A DNA stretch of 64,000 nucleotides from Bigelowiella natans CCMP2755 (GCA_000320545.1 ADNK01000241.1:37728-101727); one strand, 5' to 3'; shown: positions 35,006 to 41,172, counted from the stretch's first letter. Notes: a model not told the origin generated them from the sequence alone. Numbers and translations: made by a program.

Positions 35006-35051
35006 TATATGCTGCGATGCACATGTATTACATGCAATTACTTTGACACAC

Positions 35052-35118
<67 letters not shown>

Positions 35119-35148
35119 TAAGCGGTGCGCACCGTGCGGTAAATATAC

Positions 35149-35185
<37 letters not shown>

Positions 35186-35502
35186 CGGGCGCCAATATAT
35201 CTAGGCATGCGTACACGTGAAAATAGGCCACCGTCTTTACAATGCCCGTCTCAATGATGCCCTGCTGCTGTTCTGCGTTCGCCGACCATATAGCTATATA
35301 TTTATCAACATGATGCTTCCTTGCAATAAGCTAGGAGTAATCATTCGTGGGAGATGACAGAACGCATGAGCATGCGGTATGCCCGCAAACACGCGTGTTA
35401 GCAGATACGATGCTTCTTGCAGATAGCTGCGAAAACAGAAGTCAGCGCGTGCTTAGTCTTGAAAAGTCCAGCCGTCCAAGGGAGGAAGTTGGAGCACAGC
35501 AC

Positions 35503-37569
35503 CTACATTCCCCCCGGAACCGCGGGAACTTTGGCGTTGCTAGTGTTGACTGTACCGAACAATGGAATCGGACGGCTGTTATGACTCCTTCCATTATGAA
35601 TAGGCTTGACGTCCGAGATTGAGATGTCATCCATTTTCATGTCAGATTTGTGCTGATACGAGCTTCGGCGTTGCTGGAGCACAGAAATTGGGTTTATGAT
35701 CCCAGGCTTTATTCGCCGCTTTGCTGAGTTGGGAGCGCCAACCGTAGGAATAGACGCTTTGATGTCCTTCATCTTTCGAGCCGACCATCGTCTTATCTGC
35801 ATTGCACGGTCATGATTAGCCCAATATAAAGAAGAAGAAAGTAATTATGGCACCTCTTGGAACATGTTCGAGCCGACCCATCCTAGTGTCCTTCGTCCCT
35901 CCCTCTGAGGCGAGAGTAGATGCTAGGTAGGAGGGAAATATAGACAGTATATAAGGAGCACAGGATACGCTAGTAGTAGTGTCCTCAGAAGAAGTATCAC
36001 CTGAACGCTTTCCATCTGCGTCGCCTCAAGCTTGCCCTCCACGCGATAGAGAATTGCCATAAGTTCCATAACCATGAGGATCAGAAGGATCACACAGGAT
36101 ACGACCAAAGACGTAGACACATCTGTGATGGGTCTATATCCCATGTGTCGAGCGACCACGCGAGCATCGGAAAGGATACAAGAGTAGAAACTACGGCATG
36201 ATCTCTCCCAATAGCTTGGGAGAGCCTTTTCTAGGGTGTGCAAGAGTGCACCGGATAAGTCCCTGTTTGCGCATATAGAAGTGGTATGAATTAAAGAATC
36301 AGACTCGTAACAGCGATACCAAATGCATGTCGATCAGAGTTTGGTACCTATATCTTTGAGTCGAGCTATGGATCTATCTAATACGAATTAAACTAGACGT
36401 CGATTTATATTCTCGCAACCTTACCAAAATGTGAAGCACATTCGAGAGAGCCATTGCACGGCGGGAGGAAACTTTCGCACCGGAACGACAAGCCCCCCGA
36501 GGAGGAATCCAAGAAAGAGCATTGCGCAAAAAATGTGCAAGAATGAGTCAATATCACCATCGAAGATGACGCATAAAAGGCGGCCTAGCTGGCTGATGGT
36601 TGCGAGGTAAAGAACGGTGAAGAGGAAGAGAATCGGAACGGATTCTATATCCCAGCCTATGGAAGAATATAACATGCATTGTTCGATCAAGTTTTTCCCT
36701 TCCTAACGTGTCCTTTAATCATACTGTGCGTGCTGGCTGCCGTCTACGCACCTAAAATCGCGGGCCCCATCGAAAGGCCAACCATCACTCCTATAGCAGG
36801 GGTGACGTGTGTTTGTACCAACCCGGCAGCAAAATATGCTGAGGGTGCAATCTGAGGGTAGGAGGGAAAGAAACTGAGACAATTTCACACGCTCCACTTG
36901 AAGGGACCGTACCCTTCTGTCCGAAAGCTCCCACCGATGGGTGTTCCAGAAGTGAGCCGCCTCATGAATCTTGTAGATGAAGATCGTTGGAATCGCTGCT
37001 ACAAAAAAGCACGTGGCGAGCACAATTTGCGAGAGACTCTGATAGTCAGCAAGGAAGATGAGCGCGGCAATGAGGTACGCGACCGTGGCAAATAAAACGT
37101 CTTTCAATCCCCAGCCGCTCTCGATATGCATCCGTTGCAGGAGGTAAATGGTTTGGAATCTGGGAAATCTCGCCATCTCTCGTGGTCCAGTAGGTAGGCT
37201 GGAGGCAGAAGTTTCGAAAAGCATCTCTGCCTTCAGGGACTGATTATCCATCAACAATGTGCGACGCATCGTATCAATCAAGACTCGATGGCACGAAACA
37301 CTTTGAAAGTATATGAGGGGAGATGACCTTAATTCGAGTCAGGTTTGGCCGGAAATACGACTTTTTCTCACGTAGCGATAGCATTCTGCTGTCGTTACCC
37401 CTGGGTCCAGTTACTTCATCTGTGCTCTCGTTCAAGATTGCGTGGAGCTCATTTCCAAGATTCTCATCACCCCTCGGCCAATTCTTCTGAGGAACGATGT
37501 TTTGACAGTTCGAAGCACATATTTCAGGATTCTATTTAAATTATTCCAAACATCTGAAAGTCTCTCACA

Positions 37570-37607
<38 letters not shown>

Positions 37608-40600
37608 CTACCTGGACGCTACCGCGAAAGATAAACCGGCCCTCTTTGAGCACCAACAGGCTATCAAAACAGCGCAAAACCTCCGTGGTAGGCTGATGAA
37701 TCGTAACCAAAATGTGGCAACCCTGGTCTCGGGCAACACTTTGAAGAAATTTGGAGATTTCTTTGGAGGAAACACTATCTAATCCACTGAGCGGCTCGTC
37801 AAGATATAAGAGCTTGGGCTGTGTCATGAGCAATGAGGCCAAAGCTACGCGGCGTTGCTGCCCTCCACTCAAGTACCGCATTGGAGTCTCTTGGAACGAT
37901 TCTACATATTTGAGAACCTGCTTCATATGTGTTTTAGGAGCTCCTGACAGCTTACGACTGAAGTAGAGGAATTGTTTTGGCGTGAGATTTTTGAACATTC
38001 CGTCATCGTGCTGCCGGAGAAATCCTGTAAGAAAAATCAGAATCAGATTTGAGTGTAGCGCCAAAGACACGCAAGGTGACGTGTAGAGCAACATAAATTT
38101 CCGCATCCAGATGCATGTAGACAAGATGATTCAGGAAAGGAAAATGAACCCCAGGGAGTTTCCTGCAGGAGCCCGACAGTGCGATCTTTTCCTTTGGAGT
38201 CAAACCCAAAACAAAGTAGCCCATCCAATTGCCCTATGCCACGAAGGAGGAGAACAACACGCGTGGCAATCAAACCAAATACTTCTGGATCCGGCAAAGA
38301 AATATCCCTTCCCCACCAGACACATTCTTTCTACAGTGCAGAGTATCATGTGGGTATTTGATACAATGCAATAAACATCCTTAAAACCCCGCTGCTGTGT
38401 ACCAGTTAACGTGCGCATCAGCGTGGATTTGCCACTGCCTGACATGCCAGCGAGCGCCGTGACTCTCCCCTCCTCCATCTTAAAACTAACGTGCTTCAGC
38501 AGAAACTTGTTCGATTCTCTGTGCCAAACAAAGAGACGCTCGATGTTCAGAATGAGCTTGGGAGGCAGCACTGAAGAAGGCGGGATGCGACGAGTCTTCA
38601 ACCCTAACATCCAAAGATACAAGCTTATGGCAAAGACTTTCTCGAAAGGATGAATTGTCACAAATGCAGTTCAGCAGAGCGCTATGTTTTTTACCAAAAG
38701 GCTTTTCCTTCTCATCACTGTGATCACCAGCGGCGAGTTGCATAGTCCTCCCTCGTTGATACTCACCGCCGTTGTGACCGAGCGAGATAGTTGGCGACAC
38801 ACGGGACTCCACGTTGACAGGCAAGCTGAGAAATTAAAAATAACAATGCCGGTCGAAGAATTAAGATCTGGGCACTTTGATGCTGCTCCTTCTGAAAGCA
38901 TTCTCCATAACCTGTCGTTAGGTTGGCTTCTCGCATAGAAGCACCTCCCTTTAGTCACATACTCAAATCGTAGCAAGTAACAGCCCAGTGACGTGACCAC
39001 AAAGCCTATGATAAGACCGAACACGGCTCCTTCTGGCAATGAGCCTGGAATAAATTTGAAACCACCTTTTTAATGGGTGACGCTGATGCGACGTGGAAAG
39101 GTTCTCTTGCGTGGATCGAGTTTTTCGCATGGTTCATGCCATTGTCACCGCGGTCTGTGCCCCATTTGTATTCCTCGCCCTTGGGTACCTAGCTCATCGT
39201 CGAGTTGGAAGTAATTCTGGCATGAGCTGACCGCATCCTTTCCTTCCATGCAGTTTGCTCCTCTACACTCATCCTCGAATTTTATAACAGCCTGTTGGTG
39301 TGTATTTATATGAAGTGTGATATATGCAACCTTAACATTGGACAGAAGATGCTTACTGAATCGTCTCCTGTAATTGAGGCGAGAGGGGAGGCTGGAGTAC
39401 CGACGGTACCGGTGGCAGAGATGAAATCACCTATCCAGTTGCGAATGGCGACACCTTTAAGGTGTACATCATCCCATGGTGGATCGAGTACTTTCAGGCC
39501 AAGTCCCCATTCTAGATTTAACCTGCAGCATCCACACAATTACATCACGCACACAAACACTTTGCTTAACCCCCCCCCCCATCCCTCCTTGCTCCTCCTT
39601 TCTCCCTCTCTCCCTTACTAACACGCAACCACACAAACACTCTTGATTGCAATCTCTGTGTAGAAATTTTCATTCATAAATTGAAATACAGATGCCGCAT
39701 CCACATATCTCACTGCATGAATGTGTCGGCAAAGAGGAAGAGCACGAAAACGAGCACCTGTAGCCTAACAGCAGACGGTCTTCATCGCACAGAAAACTTA
39801 GTCCAGAGAGCGACTCTTCACAGTATGTGGTGGTGAGGCCTTTGGATGGCTGCAGGAACGAGTGGGCAGCGCATGATAGCACCATCCATATAACCTTTCC
39901 TGCTCCGTAGCTGTTCCCCCTACTACCTGCAGCCGTGCTGCCATTCGCCTTCGTATTGAGCCATGCGACCGTGTCAGCGATCGCGTCCTTCCTCCTCCCC
40001 GCCAGTTCTGATGCTTCTGCGACCGTTTCTTCACTGTTTGAGTCTTCCGAATGGATATCAAGCATTAGAAGGGTGTAGAGAGTATCATACGCGCTATTGA
40101 TTAGGAGCAGTCGCTCGTCTCGTCCAGGAGTGCTATTCTCTTCGACCCATTCGGAGATAAAGACATTTTCCTGCAACAAGCAGTGAGTGGAAAGGCAGCA
40201 GGGGGGTAGCTGAGCGTTGGAATCCACGTGATCGAAGCACAAAGGATGTTGCGTTCGATCTACGTACTGAACAAGAGATGTCGTGTTGTATGAATCACGC
40301 AGCTGCTCCACGTTTCCCATCATTGAATCTACGACTACACGAAGACGGCTTGCATTGAGACGCCGTGAGTAATTTACGATAATCTCAAAGTGGTTTAAGA
40401 TGCCAATTGCCCCTGCACTAGCTCCTGCCACCGCCAGGGTTTCCACATAGATGCCCTGTGCCTCCATCACTTCTGCGAAATACGACAAACTTTCGTTGAA
40501 GTGAGAGTCGCCTGTCCAGTAAACGCCAATGCTCGCATCGATAGAGGAACCTAAATAAGCGTCTTGCGTACAGTATGGCACCAGCCAATGGTTATATTCA

Positions 40601-41172
40601 GAGAAAAAGTCTGGATTCTCGTCAGAATCAGTCGAAAGTAGAGAGTATCCTCGGACTGTTTCAGGAAAGTTCTTGCTGCTAAAGAGCTCCGAATGACTGT
40701 CGCGAAGATCGTTGCAGGAATCCATATCAAAGCACGCACTTCCACCTTTTTCAGTCCGTGTTAGATTCAAAGGAAAGAAAAATGATTGGTGGTGTATTAT
40801 GATATCAGATATAGAAAAAGAAAAACTATCATCCGGGTATTTTTCACACACTCTGACAGCGATAATTCATACCAAGTCTAATGCTTCTCTCTCTCACACG
40901 GATGGTAGATATTTAATTAAAGCGACCATATTTTGATGAATCAAATAGATACCTTGGAAATGTATAATGTGGTTGCTTTGAATATGGTTAAAATTAGAAC
41001 CGGCATCGTGATATAATACTGCACTGGTTCCATCCCCACAGCGTGCGTTTGGTAAATTAACTCGCGATAAATACGAATCTTGGCCGTGAACTTCACTCGC
41101 CTGCTTACTGAGAACAATCCAAAATCCGATATATCTGGCAATCATAGGGAGGCACTCCGCTATACGTCCCAT
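35503..41172 (-). CDS. Pectin acetylesterase/Notum-family esterase fused via a TM helix to an ABCG half-transporter (NBD-TMD)
   Basis: Esterase motifs: ARCGDGTSAVLY, HIIHFQ|GGSACFD, LLSTDSDENPDFFSEYNHWLVPYC, GASAG, NSAYD, CAAHS. TM helix: GAVFGLIIGFVVTSLGCYLL. NBD motifs: Walker A GMSGSGKST, signature LSGGQQRR, Walker B LLYLDEP, H-loop TIHQP. ABC2 membrane segment: FLLGGLVVPVRKFPPAVQWLSRMCFTFW. All six introns between the ATG and Walker A are phase-compatible. Confidence 0.88.

What the first reader, a model, noticed from the sequence alone, without database searches (positions are those of the whole stretch)
35503..41172. Extracellular pectin-acetylesterase/Notum esterase fused to an ABCG transporter
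Seen: exons 41172-40953, 40745-39758, 39522-39357, 39291-39189, 39044-38945, 38825-38695 and 38603 onward join in phase through GT-AG introns. The product is leader - esterase - TM helix - NBD - TMD. Ser (GASAG), Asp (AYD) and His (AAH) triad candidates and all NBD motifs look intact. Established: ABCG proteins with an N-terminal luminal domain and extra TM helix exist (yeast Adp1 type, EGF-like), but there the ectodomain is not an esterase. Inference: a single-chain machine couples export to de-acetylation/de-acylation of a polysaccharide or lipid, or uses the esterase as a substrate-capture ectodomain.
Basis: partly seen in the sequence, partly recalled or inferred. Interest (0 to 1): 0.8.

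Follow-up and report, generated by a model that had tools for sequence, protein, structure and literature searches.

The report
Esterase-capped ABCG transporter gene
One spliced gene of this alga (Bigelowiella natans, according to earlier notes of the scan) encodes a Notum/pectin-acetylesterase-type enzyme joined by a single membrane helix to an ABCG-type export pump. The same unnamed fusion occurs in diatoms, an amoeba and a sponge, and I found no paper that describes it.

Summary
Extending the model gives 15 exons with no internal stop, about 1,230-1,270 aa.

Exons 1-4 form one Notum/PAE esterase domain. Its Ser, Asp and His align with the invariant catalytic residues of canonical Notum/PAE. 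Exon 5 is a single membrane helix. The remaining exons encode an ABCG-type NBD-TMD half-transporter with every ATPase motif intact.

The fusion is not an artefact of modelling. Twelve fused homologues match the locus colinearly. One homologue is an uninterrupted 1,108-aa ORF on an 84-kb genomic contig, and another is a complete ORF on a 3.8-kb transcript. Members occur in diatoms (Seminavis, Fragilariopsis, Pseudo-nitzschia, Amphora, Corethron), the amoeba Lithocolla and the sponge Halichondria. All carry uninformative names.

Both catalytic centres are invariant in 20 full-length members. Ten literature searches found no description. The nearest precedent is yeast Adp1, which has the same topology but an EGF-repeat ectodomain.

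Still missing are a B. natans transcript across exons 5-7 (own-genome records appear to be withheld) and any functional data. The scan had not noted this architecture before. I call it a new variant of a known kind.

The parts
40953..41172 (-). Exon 1: start codon, predicted signal peptide and the first strand of the esterase domain (C-G-D-G motif).
   Evidence: The ATG follows a stop and the donor is GT. The exon aligns to the N-termini of fused homologues, which all begin with a hydrophobic leader. Weak tblastn hits at 41052-40951.
39758..40745 (-). Exon 2: core of the Notum/PAE alpha/beta-hydrolase. Catalytic Ser codon 40419-40417 (G-A-S-A-G), Asp codon 40086-40084 (A-Y-D), His codon 39864-39862 (A-A-H). 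Six N-x-S/T sequons.
   Evidence: Pfam PAE E 1.5e-14. The Ser aligns to the Notum nucleophile. hhalign against canonical Notum/PAE gives prob 99.95 and E 1.4e-37, with Ser, Asp and His paired. The top fold-search hits of the model are all Notum.
39357..39522 (-). Exon 3: C-terminal part of the esterase fold (W...V.G.sI..fI block) and a variable spacer.
   Evidence: Aligns to the same block in fused homologues. That block pairs with the Notum C-terminal region in hhalign.
39189..39291 (-). Exon 4: conserved C-x-G-x-N-C / C-Q juxtamembrane motif that closes the esterase domain.
   Evidence: C.GPNC is present in nearly all family members and its cysteines are invariant in A5. It pairs with the Notum C-S-W-P-Q-C motif.
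38945..39044 (-). Exon 5: single transmembrane helix (TM0) followed by a basic R-F motif. Acidic before and basic after, which gives an N-out / C-in orientation.
   Evidence: Hydropathy window above 1.6. The L-P motif sits at the same offset from the C-Q cysteine, and R-F follows the helix, as in homologues. The homologue model has a confident helix at 469-491 in this place.
38695..38825 (-). Exon 6: poorly conserved cytosolic linker between TM0 and the NBD. This is the least supported exon.
   Evidence: AG/GT borders, in phase, no stop. There is no homology, as expected for a linker that varies from about 30 to 110 aa among homologues.
38377..38603 (-). Exon 7: first strands of the NBD and Walker A (G-M-S-G-S-G-K-S-T). 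The 3' end is uncertain: 38377 (preferred), 38283 or 38403.
   Evidence: Pfam ABC_tran positions 1-36. The family HMM aligns positions 540-597 through ...R-G-F-K, which lies beyond the 38403 donor.
38276..38330 (-). Candidate 55-nt micro-exon that supplies the strand between the Walker A helix and the Q-loop. The alternative is a long exon 7 ending at 38283.
   Evidence: AG/GT borders and in phase. Its length (20 residues for 16 missing profile positions) fits the homologues. The 46-nt intron before it is shorter than the other introns, which are 61-251 nt. Not confirmed.
37612..38024 (-). Exon 9: Q-loop (F-L-R-Q), ABC signature (L-S-G-G-Q), Walker B with catalytic Glu (L-D-E-P), D-loop and H-loop (I-H-Q-P).
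   Evidence: Pfam ABC_tran. Family HMM 162.5 bits, E 5e-51. The top NCBIfam hit is TIGR00955, the White/EPP family.
37328..37486 (-). Exon 10: end of the NBD and the linker to the TMD.
   Evidence: AG/GT borders, phase 0, no stop. The ..L-H-A-I-L-N-E.. block matches the ..d-L-I-H-E.. block of homologues.
36913..37239 (-). Exon 11: connecting helix, TM1 and TM2, and the conserved H-R-W-E-L-x-D-R-R motif.
   Evidence: tblastn hits from P0001, P0021 and P0169. Hydropathy.
36752..36851 (-). Exon 12: TM3 (I-A-P-x-A-Y... block).
   Evidence: Colinear with the R-I-S-P..Y.LA block of homologues. AG/GT borders.
36425..36656 (-). Exon 13: TM4, TM5 and the re-entrant segment.
   Evidence: Pfam ABC2_membrane positions 118-201, E 2.1e-5. 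tblastn.
36001..36262 (-). Exon 14: external loop with conserved cysteines, and TM6.
   Evidence: tblastn hits from 10 of the 12 homologues reach this exon. Hydropathy.
35503..35796 (-). Exon 15: non-conserved C-terminal tail and stop codon. Read-through of the preceding donor would give a shorter tail instead.
   Evidence: AG acceptor, phase 0, one terminal stop. No homology support.

Best explanation
This is one 15-exon gene (41172 to 35503, minus strand) for a protein of about 1,250 aa. It belongs to a conserved, undescribed eukaryotic family.

Shown here:
- A signal peptide is followed by a Notum/PAE-family serine esterase with an intact Ser-Asp-His triad and conserved cysteines.
- About 25 conserved residues after the esterase fold comes a single membrane helix, then a variable cytosolic linker.
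- The rest is a complete ABCG-type half-transporter (NBD then six-helix TMD) with all ATPase motifs.

Inferred from topology and from what is known of ABCG proteins:
- The esterase lies on the non-cytosolic face, tight against the membrane.
- The protein dimerises as other ABCG half-transporters do, so two esterase caps sit over the exit of the translocation pathway.

Most likely mechanism (inference): ATP-driven extrusion of an amphipathic, esterified small molecule or lipid, such as an acetylated or acylated lipid or sterol, or a polymer precursor. The tethered esterase then de-acetylates or de-acylates it (or trans-esterifies it) as it emerges.

My odds: single fused gene in this genome 0.9; esterase catalytically active 0.8; hydrolysis mechanistically coupled to transport 0.45.
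For: Gene structure:
- All borders are AG/GT, in phase, with no internal stop; total 3,777 nt.
- 12 of 12 fused homologues hit the locus colinearly.
- The alignment is seamless across the esterase-to-TM junction.

Fusion in other organisms:
- 8 of 8 and 6 of 6 long homologues carry PAE plus ABC_tran in Pfam; ABC2_membrane is also found in 7 of the 8 and 4 of the 6.
- L009 carries an uninterrupted ORF on an 84-kb genomic contig.
- L010 is a complete ORF on a 3.8-kb transcript.
- Named members come from five diatom genera, Lithocolla and a sponge RefSeq protein.

Esterase:
- Pfam, the Notum nucleophile alignment, the triad pairing at hhalign prob 99.95 and the Notum fold hits.
- Ser, Asp, His and eight Cys are invariant in 20 full-length members.

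ABCG half:
- The family profile aligns in one stretch over NBD plus TMD to ABCG1/25/5/2, E 1e-79 to 1e-60.
- The full-length homologue model (pLDDT 78) matches ABCG25/ABCG1/ABCG2 at target TM 0.65-0.77 over about 600 columns.

Origin: the PAE domains of fused proteins form one clade apart from solo PAE/Notum, SH-like support 0.88.
Against: - I obtained no B. natans transcript or public protein model.
- Exons 5-6-7 cross a non-conserved linker, so those two junctions rest on phase and on the fused homologues only.
- Exon 6 holds an in-frame Met that could start a stand-alone ABCG.
- The stretch between Walker A and the Q-loop has three possible models.
- Nothing here shows the substrate, the compartment (cell surface or organelle lumen), or that hydrolysis and transport act on the same molecule.
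- The exon-2 model is only moderate in quality (pLDDT 65.6, TM 0.49 to Notum).
Confidence: 0.62

Rival explanations
1. The fusion is real, but the two halves do not act on one substrate. The ABCG half or the TM helix simply anchors and localises a membrane-proximal esterase. Alternatively, the ectodomain is a regulatory or substrate-capture cap whose hydrolysis is unrelated to what is pumped.
For: The closest precedent, Adp1, has a non-catalytic EGF ectodomain, so ABCG ectodomains need not be enzymes. Some members add further ectodomains, for example a Cu2 monooxygenase in P0009. That fits a general 'display platform'.
Against: - Both catalytic centres are invariant across lineages as distant as sponge, amoeba, diatoms and a chlorarachniophyte.
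- The tether between the esterase fold and TM0 is short and conserved.
- Keeping the two halves in one chain over that evolutionary distance argues for a joint function.
Confidence: 0.25
2. In B. natans the locus is two adjacent genes: a type-I membrane-anchored PAE ending after exon 5 or 6, and a separate ABCG half-transporter starting at the Met in exon 6.
For: The exon 5/6 and 6/7 junctions lie in a non-conserved linker and have no transcript support. An in-frame Met exists in exon 6 (sequence). Both halves would be viable proteins.
Against: - Without splicing, the upstream frame runs on to stops at 38671 or 38486 (ORFs). The two genes would therefore overlap, with no room for a terminator and a promoter.
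- Every close homologue long enough to judge is fused.
- None of the other PAE-matching contigs of this genome appears among the NBD matches, so this adjacency is not a chance pairing of abundant families.
Confidence: 0.08
3. The gene is an unexpressed or decaying relic.
For: No transcript or protein record was found for it.
Against: - Fifteen exons with no stop or frameshift.
- All catalytic and ATPase motifs are intact.
- The missing records are explained by the withholding of own-genome data.
Confidence: 0.03

Closest known systems
Notum / plant pectin acetylesterases (Pfam PF03283; CAZy CE13, from memory)
   Same: Same alpha/beta-hydrolase family. The Ser (GxSxG), Asp and His pair with the canonical ones, and the C-terminal Cys motif is retained. 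It is secreted or extracytosolic and cysteine-rich.
   Different: Known members are soluble secreted enzymes. Here the domain is divergent (54 bits), ends about 25 residues before a membrane helix, and is part of a transporter chain. The fused domains form their own clade. The substrate is unknown.
ABCG half-transporters (ABCG1, ABCG2, ABCG5/8, plant ABCG25/16; White/EPP TIGR00955)
   Same: NBD-then-TMD order, all NBD motifs and an ABC2-type six-helix TMD. The family profile aligns end to end, and the homologue model superposes at TM 0.65-0.77.
   Different: Canonical ABCGs begin with a cytosolic NBD. This family has a signal peptide, a 450-aa enzymatic ectodomain and an extra TM helix in front. 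Its scores are far below the TIGR00955 trusted cut-off.
Yeast Adp1 and fungal ABC-G group VII (PMC2848647)
   Same: Same overall topology: a large soluble N-terminal domain and a membrane segment precede a single central NBD and an ABCG-type TMD. Its function is also unknown.
   Different: Adp1's ectodomain consists of EGF repeats and has no catalytic residues. Here it is a triad-bearing esterase, and no EGF domain is detected. Orthology of the ABC halves was not tested.
Export-plus-extracellular-processing systems made of separate or fused parts: plant ABCG cutin-monomer exporters with the extracellular acyltransferase CUS1; the yeast sterol acetylation/deacetylation export cycle; bacterial prodrug peptidase-ABC fusions of the ClbP/ZmaM type (all from my own knowledge, not checked here)
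   Same: The logic is the same: a protected or esterified compound is moved across a membrane and processed on the far side.
   Different: Different enzyme folds and, mostly, separate polypeptides. None is a Notum/PAE-ABCG single chain. The analogy is functional only.

Membership tests
PAE/Notum esterases (PF03283) | Significant match to the family profile above the curated cut-off | tested here: met
   Exon 2 alone scores 54.3 bits against a cut-off of 26.6, E 1.5e-14. hhalign to a canonical Notum/PAE alignment gives prob 99.95, E 1.4e-37.
PAE/Notum esterases (PF03283) | Catalytic Ser in GxSxG, plus Asp and His at the family's positions | tested here: met
   G-A-S-A-G pairs with the Notum G-S-S-A-G. 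A-Y-D pairs with L-F-D and A-A-H pairs with I-S-H, which are invariant columns of the canonical set. All three are invariant in 20 fused proteins.
PAE/Notum esterases (PF03283) | Notum-like alpha/beta-hydrolase fold | tested here: met
   Model of exon 2 (pLDDT 65.6): the listed PDB hits are all Notum, prob 1.00, TM 0.44-0.50, 270-307 columns. The ectodomain of the full-length homologue model has pLDDT of about 85-93.
PAE/Notum esterases (PF03283) | Carboxylesterase activity on acetyl or acyl esters | not testable with these tools
   Needs an enzyme assay.
ABCG subfamily (half-size, reverse topology) | NBD N-terminal to the TMD in one chain | tested here: met
   On the minus strand the ABC_tran exons (38.6-37.6 kb) precede the ABC2_membrane exon (36.7-36.4 kb).
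ABCG subfamily (half-size, reverse topology) | Intact Walker A, Q-loop, signature, Walker B/Glu and H-loop | tested here: met
   All are present in the window exons and aligned to the family HMM. They are invariant in the family.
ABCG subfamily (half-size, reverse topology) | TMD homologous to the ABCG/ABC2 type | tested here: met
   The window exon alone scores 24.6 bits, just under the 26.9 cut-off. The family profile aligns over NBD plus TMD in one stretch to ABCG1/25/5/2, and the homologue model matches them at TM 0.65-0.77. The window exons are colinear with those homologues.
ABCG subfamily (half-size, reverse topology) | Score above the trusted cut-off of the White/EPP model TIGR00955 | tested here: not met
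   It is the top NCBIfam hit, but scores 99-112 bits against a cut-off of 736. The window could only be tested exon by exon. The full-length homologues P0001 and P0006 also fall far short, so this is a divergent ABCG-like clade and not a White/EPP equivalog.
Adp1-type ABCG (fungal group VII) | Soluble N-terminal domain and a membrane segment before a single central NBD | tested here: met
   The Adp1 description comes from PMC2848647.
Adp1-type ABCG (fungal group VII) | EGF repeats in the N-terminal domain | tested here: not met
   No EGF family appears in any exon or homologue. PAE is found instead.
Adp1-type ABCG (fungal group VII) | ABC half orthologous to Adp1 | not tested

The most novel reading that the evidence does not exclude
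An ancient eukaryotic family, found in Rhizaria, stramenopiles, Holomycota and sponges, of single-chain 'export-and-deprotect' machines. An ABCG pump hands an esterified lipid or metabolite directly to its own covalently tethered Notum-type esterase on the outer face. Transport and de-acylation (or trans-esterification) would then be one coupled step, which is a mode of action not described for any eukaryotic ABC transporter.
Probability: 0.4. Interest if true: 0.8.

Novelty: new variant of a known kind. Interest (0 to 1): 0.62.

Why it matters
ABCG transporters move sterols, lipids, hormones and wall precursors. What happens to the cargo on the far side is usually left to separate, hard-to-identify proteins. 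Here evolution has welded a catalytically intact Notum-type esterase to the pump and kept it there across very distant lineages, which points directly at the chemistry of the cargo: an ester.

That makes an open question testable, namely what these divergent protist and sponge ABCGs carry. One can find the ester that the ectodomain cleaves.

It also widens the known range of the Notum/PAE family beyond soluble secreted enzymes, and gives Adp1-type 'ectodomain ABCGs' a catalytic counterpart. The members in databases are currently labelled only 'ATP-binding protein' or 'hypothetical'.

Tried and rejected
- **Joined model left out.** Every exon was searched by reference on its own. Full-length questions were put to natural homologues (P0001, P0006 and others).
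- **Public B. natans protein or transcript.** Three word-index searches covered lengths 180-574, 332-1057 and 634-2016 aa, two of them with window exons as alignment rows. None found a sequence identical to the window. The whole-library HMMER search gave at most 38% identity. An exact 30-nt exon-5 pattern found nothing in metagenome or transcriptome contigs. Two tools state that records of the window's own genome may be left out, so this says nothing about expression.
- **Other fused copies in this genome.** None of the other PAE-matching contigs appears among the contigs with NBD matches.
- **Literature.** Ten full-text searches found no description of the fusion. Only the Adp1 precedent turned up.
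- **ESM Atlas.** It returned ordinary ABCG clusters and no large PAE+ABC cluster.
- **Walker A to Q-loop models.** I tried to choose between the three models with the family HMM, but that stretch carries too little information.
- **Weak single-sequence comparisons.** phmmer and hhalign against Notum covered only the first half of the domain. Only the profile-profile comparison reached the Asp and His.
- **Flanking ORFs.** No Pfam hits.
- **Earlier scan notes.** None mention this architecture.


Full report
**What is in the sequence**

The window is eukaryotic nuclear DNA. Earlier notes of this scan name the genome as Bigelowiella natans; I could not check the name myself. Nothing here looks human.

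Every intron begins with GT and ends with AG, and the phases join without a stop.

I extended the model downstream by hand and checked it by script. It has 15 exons, all with AG/GT borders. Fourteen have no stop and the last has one terminal stop. The total is 3,777 nt, or 1,258 codons.

Each exon was used by reference, and questions about the whole chain were put to natural homologues.

**What the pieces are**

- Exon 2 matches Pfam PAE (PF03283) at E 1.5e-14, above the curated cut-off.
- Two exons match ABC_tran.
- A later exon matches ABC2_membrane.
- Exon 5 is a hydrophobic helix with acidic residues before it and basic residues after it.
- The later exons hold six hydrophobic segments.

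**Is the fusion real?**

Splice sites picked to fit a frame prove little, so I looked for independent evidence.

A full HMMER search of 1.84 billion representative proteins with exon 2 returned many hits of 1,010-1,550 aa that carry the PAE match near the N-terminus. Pfam finds PAE plus ABC_tran in 8 of 8 and in a further 6 of 6 of those tested. ABC2_membrane is also found in 7 of the 8 and 4 of the 6. A motif census found 62 session proteins with both a GxSAG esterase motif and a Walker A or ABC signature motif.

Two members settle the single-chain question without any intron modelling:
- P0015 is an uninterrupted ORF (3899..7327 of L009) on an 84-kb genomic contig.
- P0006 is a complete ORF on a 3.8-kb transcript.

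Twelve fused homologues each hit the window colinearly on one strand, from 40.75 to 36.0 kb.

In the multiple alignment the window's exons follow one another along the homologues with no gap at the exon 1/2, 2/3, 3/4 and 4/5 junctions. That includes the conserved C-x-G-P-N-C / C-Q motif (exon 4), and the L-P ... helix ... R-F pattern of the membrane helix (exon 5).

The weakest links are exons 5-6-7. They cross a linker that is variable in every member, so they rest on phase alone. Without those splices the upstream frame runs into the NBD exon (ORFs), so two separate genes would have to overlap. I put the single gene at about 0.9.

**The esterase**

- The Ser of G-A-S-A-G (codon 40419-40417) aligns with the nucleophile of human Notum.
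- Single-sequence comparisons reached only the first half of the domain.
- A profile-profile comparison worked better. It set an alignment led by exon 2 against 16 canonical Notum/PAE proteins, and gave probability 99.95%, E 1.4e-37, over 329 columns.
- In that comparison the window's A-Y-D (Asp codon 40086-40084) pairs with the invariant Asp of the canonical set, and A-A-H (His codon 39864-39862) pairs with the invariant His.
- The exon-3 and exon-4 blocks pair with the C-terminal end of Notum, including its Cys motif (also seen). Exons 1-4 therefore make one complete esterase domain that ends about 25 residues before the membrane helix.
- A model of exon 2 (pLDDT 65.6) finds only Notum structures among its listed hits.
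- In 20 full-length fused proteins from all lineages, the Ser, Asp, His and eight cysteines are invariant.
- Six N-x-S/T sequons, the cysteines and the leader fit a non-cytosolic location.

**The transporter**

- The best NCBIfam model for the window's NBD exon and for the homologues is TIGR00955 (White/EPP), although far below its trusted score.
- The family profile aligns in a single stretch across NBD and TMD to ABCG1, ABCG25, ABCG5 and ABCG2, and to PDR halves. E-values run from 1e-97 to 1e-60, and the top 27 hits are all ABCG/PDR.
- A full-length model of the Seminavis member has pLDDT 78 and pTM 0.70. It shows a confident ectodomain, one confident helix at 469-491, a disordered linker, an NBD and a helical TMD.
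- The ABC half of that model superposes on ABCG25, ABCG1, ABCG16, ABCG2 and ABCG5 at target-normalised TM 0.65-0.77 over about 600 columns.
- Walker A, Q-loop, signature, Walker B with Glu, and H-loop are intact in the window and invariant in the family.

**One detail of the gene model is open**

The family HMM aligns exon 7 through ...R-G-F-K and starts the next exon at the Q-loop. That leaves 16 profile positions unaccounted for. There are three possible models:
- A donor at 38403 would delete those positions.
- A donor at 38377 plus a 55-nt micro-exon (38330-38276) restores 20 residues, but needs a 46-nt intron.
- A long exon 7 ending at 38283 restores 33 residues.

All three are in frame. 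Only cDNA can decide between them.

**Distribution and origin**

Named members come from:
- the diatoms Seminavis robusta (two genes), Fragilariopsis cylindrus, Pseudo-nitzschia, Amphora and Corethron;
- the amoeba Lithocolla globosa;
- the sponge Halichondria panicea, as a RefSeq protein on a 7.4-Mb scaffold.

Many further members come from unnamed marine transcripts and contigs. All names are uninformative.

In a quick tree of the esterase domain, all fused proteins fall in one clade (SH-like support 0.88). The 18 apparently solo sequences inside that clade are with one exception misflagged or too short to reach an NBD: one (P0036) holds the ABC signature, two stop inside or just before Walker A, and only P0039 is ambiguous. 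None of the 21 sequences outside the clade is fused. The window's domain is sister to the diatom-rich group (support 0.998 for the joint clade). This suggests one old fusion, but it is a fast tree with few named tips.

None of the other PAE-matching contigs of this genome appears among the contigs with NBD matches.

**How it probably works**

*Shown:* the domain order, the intact catalytic centres, and the short conserved tether.

*Inferred:* the leader plus the N-out helix put the esterase on the exoplasmic or lumenal face and the NBD in the cytosol. Like other ABCG half-transporters, the protein should dimerise, which would place two esterases over the exit of the pathway.

The most economical reading is that the pump extrudes an esterified amphipathic compound and the cap removes or transfers the acyl group as it emerges.

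Candidate chemistries, from general knowledge and not tested here:
- acetylated sterols (compare the yeast sterol acetylation/deacetylation export cycle);
- acyl-glycerol-type wall or coat precursors (compare plant ABCG exporters with the extracellular acyltransferase CUS1);
- a protected secondary metabolite.

I give coupling about 0.45. The main rival (0.25) is that the two halves are merely co-localised.

**Comparison with what is known, and novelty**

The closest architecture is yeast Adp1. It has a soluble EGF-repeat domain and a membrane segment in front of a central NBD, and its function is still called enigmatic (PMC2848647). The topology is the same, but the ectodomain differs, and here it is catalytic.

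Ten full-text searches found no description of a PAE/Notum-ABC fusion. The library lacks most subscription journals, so this is absence in what I could search and not proof. The ESM Atlas shows no large cluster with this architecture. The scan's own notes hold nothing like it.

**Verdict**

The family is real, widespread, present in databases but unnamed and apparently undescribed. It is a new variant of a known kind.

Noticed in passing
P0009 (Logan contig, 1,554 aa): A triple fusion. A copper type II ascorbate-dependent monooxygenase domain (PF03712, also PF01082 in the precomputed list) sits in front of the PAE esterase and the ABCG half. This is a second processing enzyme on the same exoplasmic cap.
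   Followed up: partly
P0234 Fragilariopsis cylindrus OEU07413.1 and cluster P0018 (about 1,500 aa); P0214 Halichondria XP_064391159.1 (1,505 aa); The diatom proteins carry about 380 residues with no Pfam match in front of the esterase. The sponge protein carries about 380 residues with no Pfam match after the TMD.
   Followed up: no
P0003, P0193-P0196, P0198, P0200, P0201, P0204 and others: Many gene calls of about 600 aa from genomic contigs end 10-15 residues after Walker A. The window gene also has an intron right there (38.4 kb). This may be a conserved intron position that truncates automatic gene calls and hides the fusion in databases.
   Followed up: no
window 35040-35200 and 37560-37610: Long (TA)n and (GT)n microsatellites lie just downstream of the stop codon. 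A (GT)n run lies at the start of the intron after the H-loop exon.
   Followed up: no
G000 contigs C3193, C1122, C3126, C2716, C2038, C325 and others: The genome holds PAE-family matches on about ten further contigs. Three are strong canonical matches (178-191 bits). The fused copy is by far the most divergent (about 54-58 bits).
   Followed up: partly
Its first ORFs are on the plus strand, so the two genes look divergently arranged. The ORFs on either flank gave no Pfam hit.
   Followed up: partly
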